Shown: positions 10,849 through 28,376 of the stretch, one piece after another
Layout of the letters: each line of letters begins with the position of its first letter
How positions within the stretch are numbered: the stretch's first letter is position 1
Assembly: GCF_000143415.4 (NCBI RefSeq)
Contig: NW_003314286.1
Location: 1,673,718 to 1,737,717, forward strand
Length of the DNA stretch: 64,000 bases
Origin: Selaginella moellendorffii
Lineage: Eukaryota > Plantae > Lycopodiophyta
Direction: 5' to 3'
Notes under the pieces: generated by a model
What the model was told of the DNA's origin: nothing
Database searches by the model: none
Seen by the model: the letters and a program-made list of their open reading frames with translations, nothing else
Translations under genes and position numbers: made by a program

Positions 10849-12306
10849 CTATGGCGCGGAGCTACGATCCGGTTGAGCTATCAGTTGCTGGAGCGTCATC
10901 TCGTGGCAGAGTTGGAACGAATCGCCGGACCAAATGGACTTCGCCAAGAACTCGTTGGCACGGTCAGTCGGATGAAACTCGTCCCACCATACGTGGGTGC
11001 TTGCGTTGTGACAGGCCATTTCTGGGAGCAAGCACATCAGCCACCCTCCGAATCGTCCCATACCACAGCACGCGACGGTTGCAGTCTGGAAACCTGAGAT
11101 TTGCTAAGGTGATCAGATTTTCACAAGCAAGAATTTTAGAATGGTGCATACGTACCAAAGCTCGAAGGATTCTGGACGATCGGGAACAAACCGTCGTATA
11201 TGTCGCAGTAGATAACGTCCAGATCTGTGTGGCTTTCATACATCTTCTCCACTTCGACTCGTAAAGCGTTGTTGTATTCCTCCACCATGAAGTTGATCTC
11301 GGAGATACAGCTACCCGTTTTGCTGCCGTCTTCGTATAGAAAGTAAGGTGTGCATCCGAGAGGACCAATACCCACGACGACCATTTTACGAACGCCGACA
11401 TCATACAAGATCTGGAGAGAACGCGTCAGCAAAGCATAAACGCTGTCTAGACCAGTACCTTGAGCTGTGAAACCAGCGTTGCTACGAGCAAGTTGTTGAA
11501 GTCCAGTGGCGAGATGTCAGATTCTACACCGGAGACGTTCCTCAAGTAGTAGTGAATGAAGTCGTTGCTTCCGATGGAGATGTAGTGCAGAGATCTGGAC
11601 ATCAACTTGCGAGCAGCTTCTCGTCCGTGATTAAACACCAGTTGGTCTTTGAAATCAGACACTTGCTGGATCTGTTCGACCAGAGGAATGTGTTGGCCCT
11701 GTATGGTAAAACACCCGAAGCCTCAATGACTTGTATTCGAAGAACAAAGAGAAAGAAAAATTACCAGGTCGCCACCACTTTCACTGAGAATTCCAGCCCC
11801 AGCAGAAGCGAAGTTGGCACCGTGTCGCATGGTAGTGATGTTAAGTCCGCTCAGGAAAGGAGCCGGGAAAGGAAGCCCGATGAACTTTGCTGGAAAAAAA
11901 AAACACAAAAAAACCAGGCTATCAGATAATGCTTAAACCAAACGTTACCAAGGTAGTCGATGCTCAAGCGGCCATTGCTAAATCGTCCAGTTGGCTCGTG
12001 AGTGTCGAAATCCTTGCCATACGGAGGAATATCGGCTCTGGCCAGCGTCCTGAGGAAATTGTTGTTGCCGACATCGACAGTGGAGTCGCCGTAGACGAAA
12101 TACGCTGGAACGAGCGGTACTGCGGCATTCTCCTGAACCAGCGGCTGATCTTGAGCACGAAAGAGCTGCGCGAGTGCAAGAATGCAAGCTAGTGCGAGAA
12201 ATCGAGCTGCATTTTCAGGAATTTGCCTCAGATATCCAAGAAACCGCCACGGCGCATAGCAAAACCAGAATCTTGAGCGATCGCACGAACCTGGGCCTGG
12301 CGCCAT
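10849..12306 (-). CDS. GDSL esterase/lipase
   Basis: [46 protein letters not shown] blocks; signal-anchor-like N-terminus; 5 exons. Confidence 0.95.
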
Positions 12307-12632
12307 GATCAATCCCTCGCGCTCGTCCGCAAAACCCTACTACATAGGCGCGAAATACAAAAGCCCTTTTACTTATATACAATATTCTTGCATCTTTTAA
12401 CATTAAGCTCTCGTTTTATCTTTAATTGGTACAATGGTTTTCTATACACTGGGATATTGGATTTGTCCCAAACAAATCAACACGAAACTCTCGATCGACT
12501 TGCGTCTATACGAACGATTCTTCTATCCTCTTTTATCATCGTGCTAGCTGGTCGTGAAAATCCTGGCACAAAAATACCAAGCACAAAAGAAACCAAGCAT
12601 TGTTAGAGCTCGACCTATCGAGAAGACAACTT

Positions 12633-14906
12633 TCACAGTACCTTGAGCAAAGAGACATCGTCGTTCGCTTCCTTCGAAGAAGAGCTGCTTCTCGAGCTCA
12701 AGCTTCCGCTGGACGAGTGTTCCCGAGTCAGGTAAAGAGATCCCCTCGTCAGAGTGGAAAAGTCTGGAGGAAATGGATCTCTGATCTCGCTGGCGCTGCT
12801 CTGAGAAGAATCGGACGTGACTGGAGGACCAACACGGAGCTTGTTGATGCGCTCGAGCCGGTCTTGGACTTCCATGGAAAGATGGCCAAAGCACGTCACG
12901 CAGACGCAAGTGCTGTCGAGGCCGCACCTCCCAACGGGACCATGAGGAGAAATCCGAGTGTGCTTGACGCAAAACACTCGCTGACACTCCCGGCAGTAGT
13001 GCTTGCTAAATCTCATTCGCCAGTCCGTCGGGTTGTACCACCGATCAAAGCGATGCTTACAGCCATCGTAGTTGCAACTGCAGAGTCACACGGCTTCGGT
13101 TAAGTCCGCTGGTGAAAAAACGACCGAACTCAAGGCTTACCGGTGCCGCCTTCTTTGCTTGAGAGCGGAGGCTTCCAGCTCTCTCAAGGAACCGCCGGCG
13201 CTTCGTTCGCTTTCATTTAGATTCGCAGGCGAGGAAAGAGACCGAGCTTCCACCGTTTGTCCCGAGTCCGCACTGTCCTCTAAAGCATCCAGTTCCATCG
13301 CGCTGGACGACTTGCCCAGTTTGGTGAGGGTGCTGGCCATGCTGACAAATGTTCTCGCTATGTCCAGCTTCTTGCTCTCGTTTAACTGGGCGTTTTGAAT
13401 AGCGGCGAGCATCTCATCTATGGTGCAGTCTGGAGTCGAGTATCCTATAGCGTCACGGAAGCTGTCGCTGGGACTGAGAACTTTTTCCTCCATGCATTCC
13501 GTCGACCTTAGTTGCGGGCAAGCTTGCTTCGACAAGATAAAAACCTTCCGCTGTACTGACAGCCATCCCCGGCATAGCGACACGAAACCACGAGCCAATG
13601 TTCTCAGCCAAAAGCTTTCACTGTCCCGAGCCGCATAAACTGTCAAAGTCGCACGCTTGAAGAACTTTCTCAGCACAACCACTGCGGCCAGCGTCATGCG
13701 GAAAAAGAAGCTCTGCCTTGAAAGAACTCCCAAGAGAAAAAGGCCGCCATTGACAGACCATATCCATCCCCAAGGAGTAGTGCTCGTCTCGACCGATTCT
13801 TGCTGCTTGAGGTTCACCACCTTCGCACCATGAACTAGTGACGCAGGAACGAAGTCCGAATTCTTTGCAACCGGATTCAATGTAACGGAGCGAGGTGACG
13901 CTGTGCAGTTGGTGATAGTAACCCTCTCGGACGGACCATGACCACCCCAAGATTGCATCCTGTAAGAATAAGCCTTTCCCAGGAACAACTCGTCGCTGTC
14001 AAAAAATGAAGTCTCTTTCGTATCGGCCAGTGGCAACCACGCCGATGCTGCCCCGGACCACCTATAGAGCCGATACTTATGAAACGGTGGATATCCAGCA
14101 GTCGCCGGAGGCTCCCAGTTGATCTGAATGCCACCACAACTCGAAGGTTGGCAACGCATTCCCTGAGGAGCACCGGGAGTGGTTCCAAACCCGAAGATCA
14201 GACGGACAATGGCACCTGTTATCTTCCTCCGGTGCAACGAGCTCGACACTCCAAGTTCTTCCGCAAGAGCACGGCCGTCGTTCTCAATGAGCGAAAGGAA
14301 GTCAAGCCCGTTGATGGCGTTTCGTTGGAAGGCATCCGCATACTGTGGAAGCTGCAAGCCGTGTGAGACCCAGTTCACAACCGTATCAGCTGTGAGCATA
14401 TTTTGCAAGTGATCCTGTTATAGTTTGACACGGTAAGTGTTACGTAAAGCCAAAAAAGAAAAATTCAACGATTCACCTTCATCTCCTCGGAAGAAATTGT
14501 TTTTCCTCCATAGCTAAACTCAAAGTTTGGCCCAACAGGAGGAGCATCCCTTGACGAACCCCCGGCCTCTTCTTTAACATCAGACGAAGCGTCCAGTTCG
14601 GAAAGAAACTGGACCACAAATAAAAAGAGTGGTGTTGAAAAATCTTCCAAACAAGTGGCGCATACCTTAGTCGCTTCATGACGCTCGATCTGTCCATCCC
14701 CGTCTCGATCGACCGAGCAAAAGAATTTGTGTAGATTGTAAATCGTGCCTGTCTCACACACACACACGAAATCCCTGAATGAGAACGCGAATCACTGCTC
14801 ATTTCGGACAGAATGCACCTCTGGCGGAATGGCAAGTAGAAATCCTGGCGAGCAGCGCAAGAACTAGAAGAATCCAGAAAATCTTGGGGCAGCCCCAGCG
14901 GCTCAT
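12633..14906 (-). CDS. STIM-like EF-hand/SAM membrane protein with FN3 domain and C-terminal FYVE/AN1-like zinc finger
   Basis: Exons 14906-14819, 14748-14666, 14608-14477, 14414-13141 and 13077-12633 are joined by GT-AG introns of 70, 57, 62 and 63 nt that keep frame. Elements: signal peptide, EF loop DRDGDGQIERHE, SAM (VVNWVSHGLQLPQYADAF...HRRKI...LIFG), FN3 (PGAPQG...INWEPP...YRLYRW...YSYRMQSW), hydrophobic segment, and CNYDGC...KHYCRECQRVFCVKH...CVCVTC. Confidence 0.8.
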
Positions 14907-15549
14907 CGGCCGAACCATCTGATCAATTCAGGCCAAAGAGACAGCCACATTCACCCCCACGCGATCGCCACAGCGGCGCCAGGAGCGCGTACCTGGAGCG
15001 TCCGGAGGAGGATCGCTGCCCGTGACGAAGCCGATCATCGAGCCGGCCCTCGGCACCTATATACAAGCCTCCATTAGGGAAAGCTATTGGCTAAGTGACG
15101 AAAAAGTAAAAGATCGCAGCCGTCCAGCCAGGCATCACGGGCCGTCGATTGGGTCCCTCTTGCCGGGGTTTTAGCCTGGGGGAGCTGACTCTCAATGGTA
15201 CATGTGTGCAACGTGAGATCGATTCTTTTCGCTACCTACGTATCCAGCATGGTGGAAGCAATCACCTCTTGACAGCTCTGATGTTTACATTGTTCACGAA
15301 AATGATTTGGTCAATCTTATCGAACAGATCCAGAAAATGCCTGGAACTCAAACGATAAAAAAGCTTTGATAAAATCTCTTTCGGTGATGCTATGTGATCA
15401 CCACCATCGCTACTAGCCGCCTGTACTACACGAAGATCTCGTCCGAAAGGAACGGCTGTGATTGGGCAGCGAACGGTTGTGGCCCCTTTTCCGCGCCAAC
15501 AGAGTTTTTAGATCTTTAGGTCAGCCAATCCCGGGAGAAGGATCGATCA

Positions 15550-16641: not shown

Positions 16642-17912
16642 ATGCTGCGCGTCCCGGGGGTGAGTCTCGTCCCCATCGCCACGATCCAGGGTGGAAAGTC
16701 GAGGCACAAAACGCGAGATTTCGCTGCGCGATCCTCCTGTCTGGTTTGTGGATCTGTCGCGAGAGAGAAGCAATTGCGAGGTTTGCTAACGCTTGCTTAT
16801 GTAGGGAAATGAGAATGGTGGTTCCGCTTCCTCAGGGGGTGGTAAATCTTTCTTCGTGGCTCGATCGATTCGAGAATTTTGCTCTAAAGGTCCAATCTTC
16901 CTTGCAGGACGCGACGGAGTGACGAGGGTGAAGTTCGTGCTACAGAGACAATGCATGTTTGGCGAGCATTTCAAAGTGATTGGCGGCCATCCAGCGCTGG
17001 GCGAGTGGGATCCCAGGGCAGCGATACCTCTAGAGTGGTCTGATGGTCACAATTGGACGACAGAACTAGTAAGCACCACTCTAGGACGTAAGTGTGGAGT
17101 GGATTTCTTCGTTTCTCTTCGTCACCCTGATTGCGTGTTTCTTGCTCAGGACGTGCCACAGGGGAGCGTCTTCGAGTATAAGTTCGTATTGCAATGTCAG
17201 AATGGATGGATTCACTGGCAGCCCGGCCCCAACCGCGTCTTCTCGACGCCGGAAAAGAAGCCGTCGCTGGTTGTCTCCCAGACTTGGGATTTTGATGCCA
17301 AGGGTATGGAAGACGGCGACGCCACTGAAGCTCGAGAGGAAAGTTTATCAGGTGCTGAAGCAGCTCGTGGAAAGAACATGCTGGAAACTGAAGCTCCACA
17401 GGAAACCATGCCAGATACAAGAGCTCGAGAGGAAAGTTTATCAGGTGCTGAAGAAGCTCGTGAAAAGAGCATGCTAGAAACTGAAGCTCCACAGGAAACC
17501 ATGCCAGATACAGAAGCTCGAGAGGAAGGCACGGCCTTGGCTAGCGAGGGTGGAGATCAAGCAGCCATTTCTTCCCTGGAATCAAGACAGCTTGGTGAGC
17601 AAGCAGGATCAGACAGTGAACAAGAAGAACAAGAAGAACAAGAACAAGCTTTTGAGGCCTTGACGCAGTGCATCGAACTCCCTGGTGGTCGTCCTGATAC
17701 TCTTCCCAATTTCGACAGCGCGAAAGTATGTTGCTTCTTTCTTTTCCTTTGCTTTTGGTGGCATGAGCTTTGCATTCCAGGAGAGGAATGTGATCGAGCT
17801 GCAAGTTTCAGAGGTTCGTGTGGAGCCTCAGCTCCAGCCTACAAAACTCACCGTGTGGCAGAGGGATCGTGCCTGGTTTTCAAAAGTGCTTTCATTCGTT
17901 TTTAAAAGATGA
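16642..17912 (+). CDS. CBM20 starch-binding domain protein with acidic repeat region (probable plastid transit peptide; 5' exons uncertain)
   Basis: VKFVLQRQCMFGEHFKVIGGHPALGEWDPRAAIPLEWSDGHNWTTEL|DVPQGSVFEYKFVL...HWQPGPNR fits the CBM20 pattern; last exon ends ...SFVFKR-stop at 17912. Confidence 0.85.
17327..17530 (+). repeat. 93-bp coding tandem repeat (~2.2 copies; 31 aa)
   Basis: Units start at 17327, 17420 and 17513 (EAREESLSGAEAARGKNMLETEAPQETMPDT). Confidence 0.95.
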
Positions 17913-19982: not shown

Positions 19983-21944
19983 CTATGCCCTGGCGTGGAC
20001 GTTGGAGAGCAAAACGAAGGGGCCACCATCCTGGTTTTCCAGATTGTGAAGCTCCGTGGCTGCCAAAGATGCCTTTTGGACGTTCCCTTGCAATCCACAG
20101 GCGCTCAACACCGATCTCCACGATACAGTGCCAGGCTCAAAAGGCATCTCTAGAACAATCTCCTGCGCATCCGCAATCCTGCCCAGCCTCCCCAGCAGAT
20201 CGATCACGCAGTTAAAGTGGTCGACCACGGGAGCAATCTCAAAGTCGCCAACCATGGACGAAAACTCACAGCACGCGGTGGCCAGCATCCCGGCATGGCT
20301 GCATACGGATAGAACACACACGAAGCTAACCTCGTCCACTTCGATCCCTTCCAGCTCCATCTCCTTGAACAGCTGCAGCGTCTCCGCCCCTCGCTCGTTC
20401 TGCGCATACGCAGCCAGCATCGAGTTCCAAGCCACTCGCCCGCGATCCTCCATTCGATCAAAGATCTCCCTGGCGGCCTCGGGACACCCGCATTTCGCAA
20501 ACATGCTCACGAGCTTGGTGTCGATACCGGCGTCCGGCGGATGGACGAGTTCTTCCACGATCATGTGAATAATCTTGGCCTTCGTAGTGCAGGCGAGCCC
20601 GGAAGACGCATCTATGACTCCCATCAGTGCGGACTTGTCCGGATCGACGCCCTCCATCGCCATGCATTGGAAAACTTCGAATGCATCTCTGCTATGCCCG
20701 TTCTGGGCATACGCCCAAAGCATGGCCGACCATGTCAGCGTGTTTCGAATCGGCATGGATTGGAAGATGGAATGCGCTCGCCCCGGCAAGCCGGCCGATC
20801 CGTAAGCTGCGATTGCCGCCGTTGAGGATGCGACGTCCCAGTTCGGCATCCGGCAGTAGACAGCCTCAGCGTGAGCAAACTCCCCGTTCTCGGCATCTGC
20901 TGCAAGCATAGCGCTCCAAGAGACCAAGTTCCTCTCCGGCATGCTCGTGAAGAGGTATCTAGATTCCTTCAGATGCTCGCCCTTTCCTAGGGCCGTGACC
21001 ATTGCTGTGCTAGAAACCACATTGCTATGTGGGATCTTGGCGTAGATCTCTTTTACTCGATCCAAATCGCCCGCCTCAGCAAATGCCGTAAGAAGCGCGT
21101 TCCAAAATGGAAGATCTCTCCCGGTCGCCTGATTGAACAGCGCCATGGCCCGATCCAAATCGAGATTCCGAGCAAACCCCAGCATCATCGTGGTGCACGA
21201 CACGGCGTCACTTTCATCCATCGCCTCGAAAATCACCAACGCGCTGGCAAAATCCCCGTGCTCCACAAACGCGCTCATCATCGCGTTGCAGCTGGGCACA
21301 TTCCACTGCGGCATCCGGTGAAAGATCTCCTCCGCTTCTCTGAGATTCCCATTCTCGGCGTTCGCGACGATCATCGCCGTGCAAGGCACGACAGTGCGCT
21401 CGGGCATGGCATCAAACAAGATTCCCGCCTCTAAAAGATTCCCTGCCTGGGCATATGCTGTCACAACGATGCTCCACGAAACGACGTTGGCGACGGGCAT
21501 CCGTGCGAATAAACCGCGCGCTTCATCCACATAACCGCGCGCGCCATACGCCGTGATAACCACGTTCCAGACGACGATGCTGTGCCCGGGCATCTTAGCC
21601 AGTATATGCTTAGAATTAGCAAGATGCCCATTATGGGTATATGCCGTGACAAGGATTGTCCACGAGTAAACGTTTCTCTGGTGGATCGCATCAAATGCTT
21701 CGCGCGCTTCGATGACGCTGCCACAGCTGCCGTACATCTGGACGAGAAGATTCCCCACGAATCTTTCTCGATCCCGGCGGCCGTGGCGGGCGAGGAGGGA
21801 GTGGAGTTGCCTGCCCCTGGAGAGCGATCGCGCGCTGCCAAATTGCCTCAGCAGCTCGGCGCAGCGCTTCAGTTCTAGCTGGGGATCCGGTTCCTGAAGC
21901 TCGATTTTGGCTGCGATTGTAGCAATCGATCTCCGGAGTCCCAT
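19983..21944 (-). CDS. PLS-class PPR protein with E domain, no DYW (organellar RNA-editing specificity factor type)
   Basis: 653-aa intronless ORF with ~31-35-aa repeats (…NVVSW…M…AYAQ…G). It ends with CSHAG...HFNCVIDLLGRLG...MPFEPG..SWRSVLSAC...FVLLSN. Confidence 0.93.
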   Translation of the reverse strand: MGLRRSIATIAAKIELQEPDPQLELKRCAELLRQFGSARSLSRGRQLHSLLARHGRRDRERFVGNLLVQMYGSCGSVIEAREAFDAIHQRNVYSWTILVTAYTHNGHLANSKHILAKMPGHSIVVWNVVITAYGARGYVDEARGLFARMPVANVVSWSIVVTAYAQAGNLLEAGILFDAMPERTVVPCTAMIVANAENGNLREAEEIFHRMPQWNVPSCNAMMSAFVEHGDFASALVIFEAMDESDAVSCTTMMLGFARNLDLDRAMALFNQATGRDLPFWNALLTAFAEAGDLDRVKEIYAKIPHSNVVSSTAMVTALGKGEHLKESRYLFTSMPERNLVSWSAMLAADAENGEFAHAEAVYCRMPNWDVASSTAAIAAYGSAGLPGRAHSIFQSMPIRNTLTWSAMLWAYAQNGHSRDAFEVFQCMAMEGVDPDKSALMGVIDASSGLACTTKAKIIHMIVEELVHPPDAGIDTKLVSMFAKCGCPEAAREIFDRMEDRGRVAWNSMLAAYAQNERGAETLQLFKEMELEGIEVDEVSFVCVLSVCSHAGMLATACCEFSSMVGDFEIAPVVDHFNCVIDLLGRLGRIADAQEIVLEMPFEPGTVSWRSVLSACGLQGNVQKASLAATELHNLENQDGGPFVLLSNVHARA

Positions 21945-23335
21945 TCACTCCATGGTTGAGATCTAGGGTTCTCTCGTCGTGATCCAGTGGCGGCATTGGC
22001 AACTACCAGGCTCTGGACGAAGAAATCTCTTTGGGATCCAGTGGTAGCGAGGAAGATCCTCCATTCCAAGCTCCCAGCAGCAAAGGGCATAGTGGCAATG
22101 AGCTCGGCGGCATCTCGCGGGCGTCCTCCTCGGCACAGCGCATCGATCACACAGCAGTAGTGGCTCCTCCAAGGTGCGATTCCAAAATCCGTGCTCATGG
22201 ACGCGAAGCAATGCCGCGCCGCCGAGAATCTGCCCTCCCGGGCCAGCGCCGCGAGAACAGACACGAAGCATCCAGCGTCGGGAAGAACCTCCGCCATGAG
22301 CTTCATCCCATCGAAAATCTGGAGCACTCTTTTGGAATCTCCACTCTGGGCATTTGCTGCCAGCGCGGTGTTCCACGCGATTTCATCCTTTTGGTCCGGC
22401 ATTGCGGAGAAGAGCCGATTCATCGATCGGGTGTGTCCAGCCATGGCAAGCGCCACAAGCATCGCGCTCCAGGAGAAGAGATCCCGGGCAGGCATCGCCG
22501 CGAAGAACGAGCTTGCCTCTTCCAGATGCCCCGTTTGGGCAAATGCCGAGATCATGGAGTTCCAGGAGACAAGATCGTGAAACTCCATCGAATCAAAGAT
22601 GTGCTTCGAAGATTCTATTTGACCGTTTCGCGAGTACGCAACAAGCATTGCATTTTGTAGTGCTAGATCGTGTTCGTGTGATGAATCATAGATCGCCTTA
22701 GAGATCTCCAAATCCCCGCTCTGGGCAATTGCACTAAGGATTGCCGTCGAGGAGATCAAGTCCCACTCGGGCATGGAAGCGAAAACCTCCTTCGCCATCT
22801 CGCAGATGCCAGATTTTTCGCACGCTTGTAACAATGCTGTCCAGGAGATCAAACTTCGCATCGGCATCGCCAAGAACAGCGCCTCCGTTTCCTCCAGATG
22901 CCCCGCCTTGGCAAAAGCGCACGTCATTGCGTTCCAGGAGATCAAGCTCCGGTCCTCCATCTGATCAAACACCCTCTTCGCGGCGTCGAGATCGCCGTGC
23001 TGTGCGTGCGCGCAGAGCATCGCAGTGGCGGATATGAGATTCAGGAGCGGCATCCGGTGGAAGAATTCGGCGGTGTCGTGGTAGCAGTCGTTTGAGACGT
23101 AGGCGACGAACATAAAGTCCCAGGAGAAGGAATCGCGAGCGCCCATGGAGTCGAATATCCTCCTCGCGTTCCTAGCGCTCCCACAGCGCCCATACATTGC
23201 TATCAGATGGTTGCAAAGGAAGACATCGCAATGCTTGAGCTGGATCTCTTGCTCGATCCTCTGGGCTTGGCTCAAGTGTGAGCATCTCATCACCAATCTA
23301 ATGCATTCCTCTCTATCCATATTAAGTAGTTCCAT
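21875..23335 (-). CDS. PLS-class PPR protein with degenerate E domain; 3' end overlaps the next PPR ORF
   Basis: 486-aa intronless ORF with repeats such as DLVSWNSMISAFAQTGH; HYCCVIDALCRGG...MPF then a divergent tail. Confidence 0.85.
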   Translation of the reverse strand: MELLNMDREECIRLVMRCSHLSQAQRIEQEIQLKHCDVFLCNHLIAMYGRCGSARNARRIFDSMGARDSFSWDFMFVAYVSNDCYHDTAEFFHRMPLLNLISATAMLCAHAQHGDLDAAKRVFDQMEDRSLISWNAMTCAFAKAGHLEETEALFLAMPMRSLISWTALLQACEKSGICEMAKEVFASMPEWDLISSTAILSAIAQSGDLEISKAIYDSSHEHDLALQNAMLVAYSRNGQIESSKHIFDSMEFHDLVSWNSMISAFAQTGHLEEASSFFAAMPARDLFSWSAMLVALAMAGHTRSMNRLFSAMPDQKDEIAWNTALAANAQSGDSKRVLQIFDGMKLMAEVLPDAGCFVSVLAALAREGRFSAARHCFASMSTDFGIAPWRSHYCCVIDALCRGGRPRDAAELIATMPFAAGSLEWRIFLATTGSQRDFFVQSLVVANAATGSRRENPRSQPWSEWDSGDRLLQSQPKSSFRNRIPS

Positions 23336-26588: not shown

Positions 26589-28376
26589 ATGCCGGAAGCG
26601 CAGCACGACATCGCGCAGCTCATCAGGTCTTGCGGGAATTCCAGAAATCTCTTGAGGGCACAGGAGCTCCATCGCCGGATCCTTGCGGAAAACCCACGCG
26701 ACAGGTTTCTGGCCAATTTGGCGATCGAGATGTTTGGGCGATGCGGCAGCCCGGAGGACGCTCGTCGGGTGTTCGATCGGATTGAGAGCCCCAATACGTT
26801 CTCCTGGAACATCATGATCTCGGCATATGCCCACAATGGATACGCCACCGAGGCGGGAGAGTTCTTTGCCCGAATTCCCCGCCCGGACGTGATCTCGTGG
26901 ACGGCCATGATGAATGCATACGTGGAAGCCGGTGATCTAGCCCGAGCTAGAGTAATATTCGATCAAATCCCTGAGAAGAATCTTGTGTCGTGGAACGCAA
27001 TAGTCGCAGCATATGCCATAAACGGGCATTTGCAAGATGCTAAGAAACTCTTTGATAAGATGCCCGTGACAACGGTGAAGGCATGCACAGCGATGGTGGA
27101 GGCTTACGGATCCAACGGTGAGCTACATAAGGCACTCCACGTGTTCGAATCTGCGCCGGACAAGGACACCATCCTGTGGAACGCAATGATCCAGGCATTC
27201 ATCCACAACCAGAATATTCCCCAAGCCAGGAGGATCTTCGAATCGATGCCCAGGAGAGATTCCTCATCCTGGAACACGATGCTGGCCGGCTACGCGGGGG
27301 CGGGCGATCTGGGGCAGGCCAAGTGGATGTTCGATGCCAATCCGACCAAGACCGTTGTTTCGTGGACGGCCATGATCACGGCGTACGCCTTGTACGGACT
27401 CATGGAAGCCGCCGTACGCATGTTCCGCGCGATGCCGTACAAGGACGTGGTCGCCTGGAATGCGATGCTCCAGGCGTTCGCGGACAATGGGGATCTCCAA
27501 AGCGCGCAGACGATCTTCCACCAGATCGATCGCCCGGATCCGGCGTCCTGGAGCGCGATGATCGCGGCGTATGCCCAGCACGGGCATCTCGACGACGCGC
27601 GGCGTGTCTTCGATTCCATCCCGGCCAGATTGCTGCGCCGCAGCGTCGTGCCGTGGAACGCGATGCTGGCGGCCATCGCGCAGCTCGGCACCGCAGCTGC
27701 GGCCGTGGAGTTCTTCTCCCAAATGCCCACCAAGGACGTGGTCTCGCACACGCTCGCCATCGTCGCGCTCGCGCGCAATGGCGATTTAAACGATGCCAGG
27801 AGAGTTTTCGATGCGATGGAGAGGCGAGATCTCGTCGCTTGGGCCGCGATGCTCGCGGGCTACGCTGGAAATGGGCGATTGGACGAGGCCGAGGCGCTGT
27901 TCCAGAGAATGCCACAGAGCAGCGTTGGATCGTGGAGCGCTGTGATCCAGGCGTGTGCGCAAAACGGGCAAGGGGAGGCGGCGCTGGATTTCTTCCGGAG
28001 GATGGAGCAAAGAGGAGTGGAAGCTGACGCGCTGGCGATCATGGGAGTTCTCGCGGCGTGTAGCCATGTTGGATCGGTGGAGGAAGCCTGGTACTATTTC
28101 ACGTCCATGGAGATTGACAGGGGGATCCTTCCCAAGTTGGAGCACTACCACAGCATGGTTGACGCGCTGGGACGGTCTGGCAGGATGAGAGAGGCCGAGG
28201 AACTTATCCACACCATGCCGTTCCTTCCAACTTCTATATCGTGGACGACGCTTCTGGGAGCTTGCAAGATCCACAAAAACGTCGAGCTTGCGGAGCTTGC
28301 TGCGGAGAACGCTCGCCGGCTCCAGCCACAGAACATTGCGTCCTACGTGCTGCTCTCGAATTTGATTACTGCATGA
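26589..28376 (+). CDS. PLS-class PPR protein with E domain, no DYW
   Basis: 595-aa intronless ORF, PPR repeats, ACSHVG...HYHSMVDALGRSG...MPFLP..SWTTLLGAC...SYVLLSN. Confidence 0.93.
   Translation: MPEAQHDIAQLIRSCGNSRNLLRAQELHRRILAENPRDRFLANLAIEMFGRCGSPEDARRVFDRIESPNTFSWNIMISAYAHNGYATEAGEFFARIPRPDVISWTAMMNAYVEAGDLARARVIFDQIPEKNLVSWNAIVAAYAINGHLQDAKKLFDKMPVTTVKACTAMVEAYGSNGELHKALHVFESAPDKDTILWNAMIQAFIHNQNIPQARRIFESMPRRDSSSWNTMLAGYAGAGDLGQAKWMFDANPTKTVVSWTAMITAYALYGLMEAAVRMFRAMPYKDVVAWNAMLQAFADNGDLQSAQTIFHQIDRPDPASWSAMIAAYAQHGHLDDARRVFDSIPARLLRRSVVPWNAMLAAIAQLGTAAAAVEFFSQMPTKDVVSHTLAIVALARNGDLNDARRVFDAMERRDLVAWAAMLAGYAGNGRLDEAEALFQRMPQSSVGSWSAVIQACAQNGQGEAALDFFRRMEQRGVEADALAIMGVLAACSHVGSVEEAWYYFTSMEIDRGILPKLEHYHSMVDALGRSGRMREAEELIHTMPFLPTSISWTTLLGACKIHKNVELAELAAENARRLQPQNIASYVLLSNLITA

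What the first reader, a model, noticed from the sequence alone, without database searches (positions are those of the whole stretch)
12633..14906. A plant STIM-like luminal Ca2+ sensor: signal peptide-EF-hand-SAM-FN3-TM-FYVE/AN1-like protein
Seen: frame-consistent splicing gives a signal peptide and a perfect EF loop (D1-D3-D5-G6-I8-E12: DRDGDGQIERHE, then ATKFL). This is followed by FSYGGKTISSEEMK and a SAM domain TVVNWVSHGLQLPQYADAF...SSLHRRKITGAIVRLIFG. Established (from memory): animal STIM1 has the same luminal order and similar motifs (DDDANGDVDVEESDEFL; FHGEDKLISVEDL hidden EF-hand; EVVQWLITYVELPQYEETF...RSHRQKL...VLFG). Plants are generally described as lacking STIM, although Orai-like channels are reported in algae and non-flowering land plants. 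Unlike STIM, this protein has an FN3 domain before the membrane segment, and its cytosolic side has helical segments and a Cys/His finger (CNYDGC...KHYCRECQRVFCVKH..PH..C...CVCVTC) with no obvious CAD/SOAR or polybasic tail. Inference: it may be an ER/secretory Ca2+-store sensor that oligomerises via EF-SAM and tethers to phosphoinositide-marked membranes, i.e. a candidate missing partner for plant Orai or an ER-endosome contact system.
Basis: partly seen in the sequence, partly recalled or inferred. Interest (0 to 1): 0.92.

Follow-up and report, generated by a model that had tools for sequence, protein, structure and literature searches.

The report
Plant membrane protein with STIM-type calcium sensor
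This expressed Selaginella gene belongs to an undescribed family of green algae, non-flowering plants and stramenopiles whose outward-facing end closely resembles the calcium-sensing module of animal STIM, a protein that reviews say plants lack; its function is untested.

Summary
The locus is Selaginella moellendorffii LOC9637430, annotated "uncharacterized". Transcript contigs from four studies remove every intron.

The 683-aa protein reads: signal peptide, canonical EF-hand, non-canonical EF-hand, SAM, FN3, one membrane segment, variable linker, zinc finger.

A 49-sequence family profile matches STIM1 and STIM2 EF-SAM end to end (domain E about 1e-13). An AlphaFold model (pLDDT 86) has STIM EF-SAM as its only whole-module match in the PDB (Z 13.2 over 142 residues; TM 0.64).

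The family is vertically inherited from chlorophytes through charophytes, mosses and lycophytes to gymnosperms. No angiosperm member was found. That range parallels the published range of Orai. It also occurs in labyrinthulids and oomycetes, and oomycetes are reported to lack Orai.

It is not a STIM orthologue. It has no SOAR/CAD domain, an FN3 domain sits before the membrane, and the Pfam STIM EF-hand threshold is not met. The zinc finger is FYVE-derived, but in plants it lacks the canonical PI3P-binding signature.

Calcium binding, subcellular location and output remain untested. The scan had not found this on other DNA.

The parts
12413..15067 (-). Whole transcribed gene (S. moellendorffii LOC9637430), six exons
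   Evidence: One 2324-nt transcript contig spans 15067..12413 with all five introns removed. Three further studies show the same joints. The NCBI protein P0001 matches.
14819..14918 (-). Exon 1 coding part: start codon and signal peptide (aa 1-33)
   Evidence: Hydrophobic stretch aa 13-31, Kyte-Doolittle 1.83. An equivalent N-terminal stretch is present in all four orthologue models with a complete N-terminus. Translation.
14666..14748 (-). Exon 2: canonical EF-hand 1. The Ca2+ loop DRDGDGQIERHE (aa 47-58) lies at 14710-14675.
   Evidence: Pfam EF-hand_1 E=2e-4 on the exon alone. Loop positions 1, 3, 5, 6, 8 and 12 are conserved in 47-48 of 49 family members.
14477..14608 (-). Exon 3: exit helix of EF-hand 1, variable loop and non-canonical ('hidden') EF-hand 2 (FSYGGKTISSEE)
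   Evidence: Loop-2 position 8 is I/V/L and position 12 is E/D in 49/49 members. Positions 1, 3 and 5 are not acidic in land plants. In the model, strand 69-71 lies at the position expected to pair with strand 24-26 of EF-hand 1; the pairing itself was not checked.
14190..14396 (-). SAM domain (aa 112-180)
   Evidence: Pfam SAM_2 1e-8 and SAM_1 1.3e-7. In the SAM-only family profile, STIM2 is the best PDB hit at 1.7e-10.
13905..14177 (-). FN3 domain (aa 185-275) with conserved Cys193 and Cys275
   Evidence: Pfam fn3 0.018 here, 2e-6 in P0006, and 18/49 members match with best 1e-16. C193 and C275 are invariant in land plants.
13671..13772 (-). Membrane-spanning stretch (aa 320-353), followed by RKFFKR
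   Evidence: This is the only internal hydrophobic peak. It is conserved in orthologues and has basic residues on its C-terminal side.
13141..13670 (-). Cytosolic linker (aa 354-530), poorly conserved across the family
   Evidence: Low occupancy and information content in the 49-sequence alignment. No Pfam domain and no SOAR.
12831..13076 (-). FYVE-derived zinc finger plus following helix (aa 531-612; Cys/His core at 13076-12891)
   Evidence: Eleven Cys/His are invariant in 34 members. The profile's best PDB hits are FYVE domains: WDFY3 3e-4, Vps27, EEA1, Hrs. The ESM Atlas gives FYVE by both features and structure.
12536..12830 (-). Ser-rich C-terminal tail. Exon 5 ends at 12642, intron 5 is 12641-12563, and exon 6 codes 12562-12536 including the stop.
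   Evidence: The 12641/12561 joint is seen in all four runs. The P0001 C-terminus is DFHDQLAR.

Best explanation
This is an expressed six-exon gene encoding a type I membrane protein. It belongs to an old, vertically inherited and so far undescribed family found in chlorophytes, streptophyte algae, mosses, lycophytes and gymnosperms, and also in labyrinthulid and oomycete stramenopiles.

The extracytosolic part is a STIM-type EF-SAM module: one canonical Ca2+-binding EF-hand, a non-canonical partner EF-hand, and a SAM domain packed against them. An FN3 domain follows. The cytosolic part is a variable linker of about 170 residues ending in a FYVE-derived zinc finger.

The most likely mechanism is as follows. 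The module reports Ca2+ in the lumen of a store (ER, secretory or endosomal-vacuolar compartment) or in the apoplast. When Ca2+ leaves the EF-hand, the EF-SAM module loosens and self-associates, as it does in STIM. That clusters the cytosolic fingers and raises their avidity for a target membrane or protein.

Shown here: the gene, its splicing, the architecture, its conservation, and sequence and predicted-fold similarity to STIM EF-SAM. Inferred: Ca2+ binding, oligomerisation, subcellular location and the output.
For: - **Splicing and expression:** transcript contigs from four studies remove all introns.
- **Architecture:** Pfam and hydrophobicity analysis.
- **Sequence match to STIM EF-SAM:** it strengthens as the profile deepens. 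One sequence gives 1.3e-4, four sequences 1.9e-8, and 49 sequences 1.5e-14, with single stretches covering profile 3-141 against STIM2 18-149, C. elegans STIM 24-158 and STIM1 20-149. No other PDB chain is matched end to end.
- **Predicted fold:** the AlphaFold model built without STIM sequences has pLDDT 85.9. Foldseek's top three hits are the three STIM EF-SAM structures, at TM 0.64, 0.59 and 0.50, while SAM-only hits score 0.34. A Foldseek-independent scan of 48,161 chains gives STIM Z 13.2 over 142 residues, against about 10 over 68 residues for SAM-only chains. ESM Atlas STIM clusters score TM 0.66-0.67.
- **EF loop:** canonical in 47-48 of 49 members.
- **Topology:** a signal peptide, two conserved FN3 cysteines, and a cytosolic zinc finger.
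- **Inheritance:** the gene tree follows the species tree.
- **Taxa:**
Against: - The SAM-only profile does not separate STIM cleanly from other SAM domains: STIM2 1.7e-10, liprin-beta1 8.9e-10, Shank2 2.5e-8.
- The EF-only profile finds generic calmodulin-type proteins. Independent fusion of an EF pair to a SAM domain is therefore not excluded.
- Pfam EF-hand_STIM1 scores 14.7 bits against a cut-off of 32.2.
- AlphaFold was trained on STIM structures, which could bias the predicted packing.
- No ER-retention signal is evident, and FN3 domains are typical of cell-surface proteins.
- There is no coiled-coil or SOAR effector.
- The plant finger lacks the canonical FYVE R(R/K)HHCR and RVC motifs.
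- No biochemical data exist.
Confidence: 0.55

Rival explanations
1. It is the functional counterpart of STIM in the green lineage: an ER store sensor that gates plant and algal Orai channels (store-operated Ca2+ entry), using its cytosolic tail in place of CAD/SOAR.
For: - It has a STIM-type EF-SAM module.
- Reviews state that Orai persists in the green lineage up to gymnosperms, that STIM is missing, and that another sensor must exist.
- This family has the same range: chlorophytes to Ginkgo and gymnosperm-like transcripts, with no angiosperm hit in any of four searches.
- Orai-like genes were noted elsewhere in this genome by the scan. Those notes are unchecked.
Against: - No SOAR/CAD domain and no conserved coiled coil. 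The linker is the least conserved part of the protein.
- The family occurs in oomycetes, which are reported to have no Orai.
- Many genes share the pattern of loss in angiosperms.
- ER location is unknown.
Confidence: 0.2
2. The EF-SAM resemblance is convergent or purely modular. The protein is a cell-surface or endomembrane receptor or adhesion-type molecule in which Ca2+ is structural, and SAM and FN3 mediate constitutive assembly. The FYVE-like finger directs trafficking.
For: - The separate SAM-only and EF-only profiles do not single out STIM decisively.
- FN3 is common in extracellular receptors.
- The Pfam STIM EF-hand threshold is not met.
- Some stramenopile-type members carry two tandem EF-SAM-FN3 units, an arrangement that resembles repeat-type ectodomains.
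Against: - The whole-module match to STIM is collinear and gap-poor, and it grows stronger with profile depth.
- STIM2 is the best SAM hit and aligns over 68 profile positions to 69 residues. In the land-plant profile the STIM SAM alignments are gap-free, while SAMD5 needs a deletion.
- The predicted EF/SAM packing matches STIM uniquely among 48,161 chains.
- The Ca2+ ligand positions are under strong constraint.
Confidence: 0.2
3. The protein is an annotation or splicing artefact, and the domains are never joined in one protein.
For: None found.
Against: Full-length spliced transcript contigs come from four studies. The same architecture is seen in dozens of species.
Confidence: 0.01

Closest known systems
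Animal STIM1/STIM2 (stromal interaction molecules), luminal EF-SAM domain (PDB 2K60, 2L5Y, 6PW7)
   Same: - Both have a signal peptide and type I topology.
- Both have a canonical EF-hand followed by a non-canonical partner EF-hand and then a SAM domain of the same length.
- The match is collinear (domain E about 1e-13).
- The predicted packing of SAM on the EF pair is the same (Z 13.2, TM 0.64).
   Different: - An FN3 domain and a spacer lie between SAM and the membrane.
- There is no CC1 or CAD/SOAR and no polybasic tail. Instead there is a variable linker and a FYVE-derived zinc finger.
- Identity is only about 19-21%.
- The Pfam EF-hand_STIM1 threshold is not met.
- The helix between EF-hand 2 and SAM appears about one turn shorter than in STIM1. 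This rests on my recollection of the STIM1 sequence and was not tested.
FYVE zinc fingers (EEA1, Hrs/Vps27, WDFY3)
   Same: Both are cross-braced Cys-rich fingers. FYVE domains are the best PDB profile hits, and the ESM Atlas gives FYVE by features and by structure. Stramenopile-type family members keep the (K/R)RHHCRxC signature.
   Different: - Green-lineage members have Cx4C as the first ligand pair, KHYC(R/G)xCQ instead of R(R/K)HHCRxCG, and CxCxxC instead of RVCxxC.
- They carry extra invariant His/Cys (HT..SPHG, C581, C587), twelve conserved or near-invariant ligand-type residues in all.
- No Pfam family reaches threshold in the Selaginella protein.
Oomycete 'Calmodulin'-named SAM+FN3 proteins (ESM Atlas cluster of 70 members) and labyrinthulid proteins with tandem EF-SAM-FN3 units
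   Same: They share the same EF-SAM-FN3 module (TM 0.70 over 141 residues; HMM matches) and a C-terminal finger.
   Different: Some have two tandem modules, and their finger is closer to canonical FYVE. They belong to a different eukaryotic supergroup.

Membership tests
STIM (stromal interaction molecule) | N-terminal signal peptide and type I single-pass topology, with the sensor on the luminal side | tested here: met
   There is an N-terminal hydrophobic signal-like stretch, one internal hydrophobic stretch followed by basic residues, conserved FN3 cysteines, and a C-terminal zinc finger. This is a sequence-level inference only.
STIM (stromal interaction molecule) | A canonical EF-hand plus a non-canonical ('hidden') EF-hand, directly followed by a SAM domain that packs on the pair (EF-SAM) | tested here: met
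   The profile matches STIM1 and STIM2 end to end, with domain E 9.7e-14 for STIM2, 1.1e-13 for C. elegans STIM, and whole-sequence E 1.3e-12 for human STIM1. The model matches STIM EF-SAM as a whole.
STIM (stromal interaction molecule) | Pfam EF-hand_STIM1 (PF25578) at gathering threshold | tested here: not met
   14.7 bits against a cut-off of 32.2 in P0001. Only 4 of 49 family members reach E<=0.01, best 2.2e-5.
STIM (stromal interaction molecule) | Membrane segment directly after the SAM domain | tested here: not met
   An FN3 domain (aa 185-275) and a spacer of about 45 residues precede the membrane stretch at aa 320-353.
STIM (stromal interaction molecule) | Cytosolic CC1 plus CAD/SOAR (PF16533), the Orai-activating region | tested here: not met
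   No SOAR hit in any of 49 members at E<=0.01. The linker is the least conserved region.
STIM (stromal interaction molecule) | Ca2+ binding with depletion-induced oligomerisation, and gating of Orai | not testable with these tools
   This needs biochemistry and cell physiology.
FYVE domain (PF01363) | Pfam gathering threshold and an eight-Cys two-zinc scaffold | tested here: inconclusive
   P0001 scores E=0.049, below threshold. Two of 49 members reach 3.7e-6. The family profile's best PDB hits are FYVE domains, best E=3e-4.
FYVE domain (PF01363) | PI3P-binding motifs WxxD, R(R/K)HHCR and RVC | tested here: not met
   The Selaginella protein has SKHYCRECQ and CVCVTC. Only stramenopile-type members keep (K/R)RHHCR.
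SAM domain (PF07647/PF00536) | Pfam gathering threshold | tested here: met
   SAM_2 35.6 bits (cut-off 20.5) and SAM_1 32.2 bits (cut-off 23).
Fibronectin type III (PF00041) | Pfam gathering threshold | tested here: inconclusive
   P0001 scores 15.7 bits, below the cut-off of 25. Orthologue P0006 scores 28.2 bits, and 18 of 49 members match with best 1.2e-16. The domain is real at family level.

The most novel reading that the evidence does not exclude
STIM-type luminal EF-SAM Ca2+ sensors are not an animal/holozoan invention. They belong to an ancient eukaryotic family shared with Viridiplantae and stramenopiles. In the green lineage this family would be the long-sought store sensor that controls Orai, or another Ca2+ entry or contact-site pathway, and it would have been lost together with Orai in flowering plants.
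Probability: 0.2. Interest if true: 0.95.

Novelty: new variant of a known kind. Interest (0 to 1): 0.8.

Why it matters
Reviews from 2016 to 2025 state that STIM is absent from plants, green algae, diatoms and oomycetes. They treat Orai without a sensor in algae and early land plants as an open problem.

This family supplies a concrete candidate that can be tested directly. It has a conserved Ca2+ loop and a STIM-like EF-SAM fold, and its range in the green lineage parallels the range reported for Orai. It is present in genetically tractable species (Physcomitrium; the Chlamydomonas relative Gonium). It also bears on when EF-SAM sensing arose in eukaryotes.

Even if Orai is not the target, a Ca2+-sensing module coupled to a FYVE-type finger would be a new kind of link between luminal Ca2+ and membrane identity.

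Tried and rejected
- **Shallow AlphaFold alignment:** It was replaced after a deeper alignment was built.
- **Full-length profile search:** the exhaustive search was swamped by giant FN3-repeat proteins. Mid-size hits had to be picked out with a local HMM search.
- **Word-indexed search with the 49-sequence alignment:** it added nothing new apart from FN3 noise such as Dscam.
- **Species of the Logan transcript clusters:** P0008, P0010 and P0090 could not be named because only run accessions were returned. Their placement rests on the tree.
- **Collins and Meyer 2011:** not held in the library.
- **Prior description:** searches for 'EF-SAM' + plant, 'STIM-like', and STIM/Orai with Selaginella, Physcomitrella or oomycetes returned no paper describing this family.
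- **Flagellum or motile-sperm gene:** rejected, because Zygnematophyceae, which by general knowledge have no flagellate stage, have it. Many Selaginella RNA runs also hold the transcript.
- **AN1 or IBR finger:** Pfam E-values were only 0.1-0.2. FYVE is the better-supported relative.
Full report
**Observation**

The gene lies on the minus strand.

A protein search identified the locus as Selaginella moellendorffii LOC9637430, "uncharacterized protein", 683 aa (P0001). It is identical to my translation except at the C-terminus.

I laid transcript contigs from four independent studies on window 12400-15100. The introns are removed, all with GT..AG on the minus strand, and every joint is seen in at least three of the four runs:
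- 14818-14749
- 14665-14609
- 14476-14415
- 13140-13078
- 12641-12563

One 2324-nt contig runs from 15067 to 12413 with all five joints.

The stop at 12633 lies in intron 5, so the true C-terminus is ...LLKDFHDQLAR. The first in-frame ATG is at 14918.

**Anatomy**

| Element | Residues | Evidence |
|---|---|---|
| Signal-like hydrophobic stretch | 13-31 | also in all four orthologue models with a complete N-terminus |
| EF-hand 1, loop DRDGDGQIERHE | 47-58 | |
| EF-hand 2, non-canonical loop FSYGGKTISSEE | 92-103 | |
| SAM | 112-180 | Pfam 1e-8 |
| FN3 | 185-275 | below threshold here, above it in orthologues |
| Membrane stretch, then RKFFKR | 320-353 | |
| Variable linker | 354-530 | |
| Cys/His finger | 531-592 | |
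| Ser-rich tail | 613-683 | |

- In a 49-sequence family alignment, EF loop 1 is D at position 1 in 47/49, D/N at position 3 in 47/49, D/N at position 5 in 47/49, G at position 6 in 48/49, I/L/V at position 8 in 48/49 and E at position 12 in 48/49. That is the signature of a working Ca2+ site under selection.
- Loop 2 keeps positions 8 and 12 but lacks acidic ligands at positions 1, 3 and 5 in land plants. It resembles a pairing-only "hidden" EF-hand.
- Two cysteines flanking the FN3 domain (C193, C275) are invariant in land plants.
- A signal peptide, FN3 cysteines that could form a disulfide (not tested) and a C-terminal zinc finger all fit an N-out, C-in orientation. This is inference, not measurement.

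**The family**

Word-indexed and exhaustive HMMER searches, followed by cluster look-ups, gave orthologues with the same architecture in these groups:

| Group | Taxa |
|---|---|
| Lycophytes | Diphasiastrum |
| Mosses | Sphagnum species, Physcomitrium, Ceratodon |
| Gymnosperms | Ginkgo |
| Streptophyte algae | Spirogloea, Closterium, Chara, Chlorokybus |
| Chlorophytes | Pyramimonas, Picocystis, Tetraselmis, Gonium, a pedinophyte, Bryopsis |
| Labyrinthulid (stramenopile) | Mucochytrium |

Two transcript clusters are sister to Ginkgo on the tree. An ESM Atlas cluster of 70 oomycete proteins carrying SAM+FN3 matches the model at TM 0.70. Some stramenopile-type members carry two tandem EF-SAM-FN3 units.

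A quick maximum-likelihood tree follows the species tree: chlorophytes, then Chara, Zygnematophyceae, mosses and tracheophytes. This indicates vertical inheritance of a mostly single-copy gene.

No angiosperm protein appeared in any of four searches. One tracheophyte-clade transcript (P0090) remains unnamed. I did not identify fern, liverwort or hornwort members. That is a gap in naming, not evidence of absence.

Across the family the conserved blocks are EF1, EF2, SAM, FN3, the membrane stretch and the finger. The linker is variable.

**Is the sensor module STIM-like?**

Sequence evidence:
- With the Selaginella EF-SAM alone, phmmer aligned C. elegans STIM (E 1.3e-4) and human STIM2 (E 1e-3) in single stretches running from the EF loop to the end of SAM.
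- A four-sequence profile raised this to 1.9e-8.
- The 49-sequence profile gave single-stretch matches to all three STIM chains:

| PDB chain | Bits | E-value | Profile range | Chain range |
|---|---|---|---|---|
| STIM2 (2L5Y) | 54.8 | domain 9.7e-14 | 3-141 | 18-149 |
| C. elegans STIM (6PW7) | 54.6 | domain 1.1e-13 | 3-142 | 24-158 |
| STIM1 (2K60) | 51.1 | whole sequence 1.3e-12 | 5-141 | 20-149 |

- All other strong PDB hits are calmodulin-type proteins that score by repeated matches to the single EF-hand.

Structure evidence:
- An AlphaFold2 model built on that alignment, which contains no STIM sequences, reached pLDDT 85.9 and pTM 0.79.
- Foldseek's top three PDB matches are exactly the three STIM EF-SAM structures, at TM 0.64, 0.59 and 0.50. 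SAM-only hits follow at TMq 0.34.
- VIA-align gave 6PW7 Z 13.0 over 143 residues.
- A Foldseek-independent scan of 48,161 representative chains put 6PW7 first at Z 13.2 over 142 residues and rmsd 3.4 Å. SAM-only chains scored about 10 over 68 residues.
- ESM Atlas STIM clusters match at TM 0.66-0.67 over about 145 residues.

Caveats:
- Taken apart, the two halves are less specific. With a SAM-only profile STIM2 is the best PDB hit (1.7e-10), aligned over 68 profile positions to 69 residues. Liprin-beta1 (8.9e-10), STIM1 (4.5e-9) and Shank2 (2.5e-8) are close behind.
- With the land-plant SAM profile the order is C. elegans STIM, human STIM1, SAMD5, STIM2, all within two orders of magnitude. 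There the STIM alignments are gap-free, while SAMD5 needs a deletion.
- The EF-only profile finds generic EF-hand proteins.
- Pfam's EF-hand_STIM1 model scores only 14.7 bits against a cut-off of 32.2.
- Common descent of the composite module is the simplest reading, but independent assembly of an EF pair with a SAM domain is not excluded.
- AlphaFold has seen STIM structures in training.

**What it is not**

No member has SOAR/CAD. An FN3 domain separates SAM from the membrane, and there is no polybasic tail. It should not be filed as a STIM orthologue.

**The finger**

- Eleven Cys/His are invariant in 34 members, and H569 and T570 are nearly so.
- The family profile's best PDB hits are FYVE domains: WDFY3 3e-4, Vps27 0.009, EEA1 0.015, Hrs 0.024.
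- The ESM Atlas agrees by both features and structure.
- Stramenopile-type members keep CxxC and (K/R)RHHCRxC, close to the canonical PI3P-binding signature.
- Green-lineage members have Cx4C, KHYC(R/G)xCQ and CxCxxC, plus an added HT..SPHG block.

The finger is FYVE-derived. PI3P binding is plausible for the stramenopile-type forms and doubtful for the plant forms.

**Mechanism**

By analogy with STIM (established knowledge: Ca2+ loss destabilises EF-SAM and drives oligomerisation), I propose that the module reports extracytosolic Ca2+. Its self-association would cluster the cytosolic fingers at the end of long flexible linkers, raising their avidity for a membrane or partner.

This parallels the avidity-dependent membrane binding known for FYVE proteins and for the STIM polybasic tail. 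Every step after "architecture" is inference.

**Orai**

Reviews state that Orai is present in the green lineage up to gymnosperms and absent from angiosperms. They also state that STIM is absent and that another activator must exist (one search covers STIM absence only).

This family's range in the green lineage parallels that pattern. First-stage notes of this scan report Orai-like genes elsewhere in this genome; they are unchecked.

Against obligate coupling:
- The family is present in oomycetes, which are reported to lack Orai.
- No Orai-binding region is recognisable.
- Its presence in Zygnematophyceae, which by general knowledge lack flagella, argues against a role tied to motile cells.

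**Novelty**

I found no paper describing this family. Database names are "uncharacterized", "Calmodulin" or "EF-hand/FN3 domain-containing". The library searched is incomplete, and Collins and Meyer 2011 could not be read.

**Verdict**

- The STIM-like sensor reading is well supported at sequence and predicted-structure level.
- The store-operated-entry role is an attractive hypothesis, but it is untested and partly contradicted by the oomycete distribution.

Noticed in passing
window 11851-12312 (-): An ORF starting about 100 bp beyond the 3' end of the mRNA carries a GDSL-lipase-like N-terminal motif ([15 protein letters not shown]). Pfam gave no hit for this exon alone.
   Followed up: partly
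window 16856-17905 (+): An ORF with a CBM_20 starch-binding domain (Pfam E=4e-15).
   Followed up: partly
window 19983-21944 (-), 21875-23335 (-), 26589-28376 (+): Three pentatricopeptide-repeat ORFs, two of them with weak, below-threshold matches to the Pfam E motif. This fits the large PPR expansion known in Selaginella.
   Followed up: partly
window 12531-14277, run X9: One transcript assembly differs from the window at about 12 positions, while the others differ at 1-6. This is probably another haplotype or accession rather than RNA editing. No DNA run of the same individual was checked.
   Followed up: no
P0002 (Diphasiastrum), P0005 (Ginkgo): The deposited gene models look truncated. The Diphasiastrum model lacks the zinc finger. 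The Ginkgo model lacks the signal peptide and EF-hand 1, whereas gymnosperm-like transcripts (P0008, P0010) have the full architecture.
   Followed up: partly
P0142, P0153, P0167, P0172, P0177, P0187, P0191, P0198: Stramenopile-type relatives carry two tandem EF-SAM-FN3 units in one protein. Several keep a near-canonical FYVE signature ((K/R)RHHCRxC).
   Followed up: partly
P0003, P0113, P0136, P0236 (UniRef names): Several family members are named 'Calmodulin' in UniRef. This is an automatic name that hides the membrane-protein architecture.
   Followed up: no
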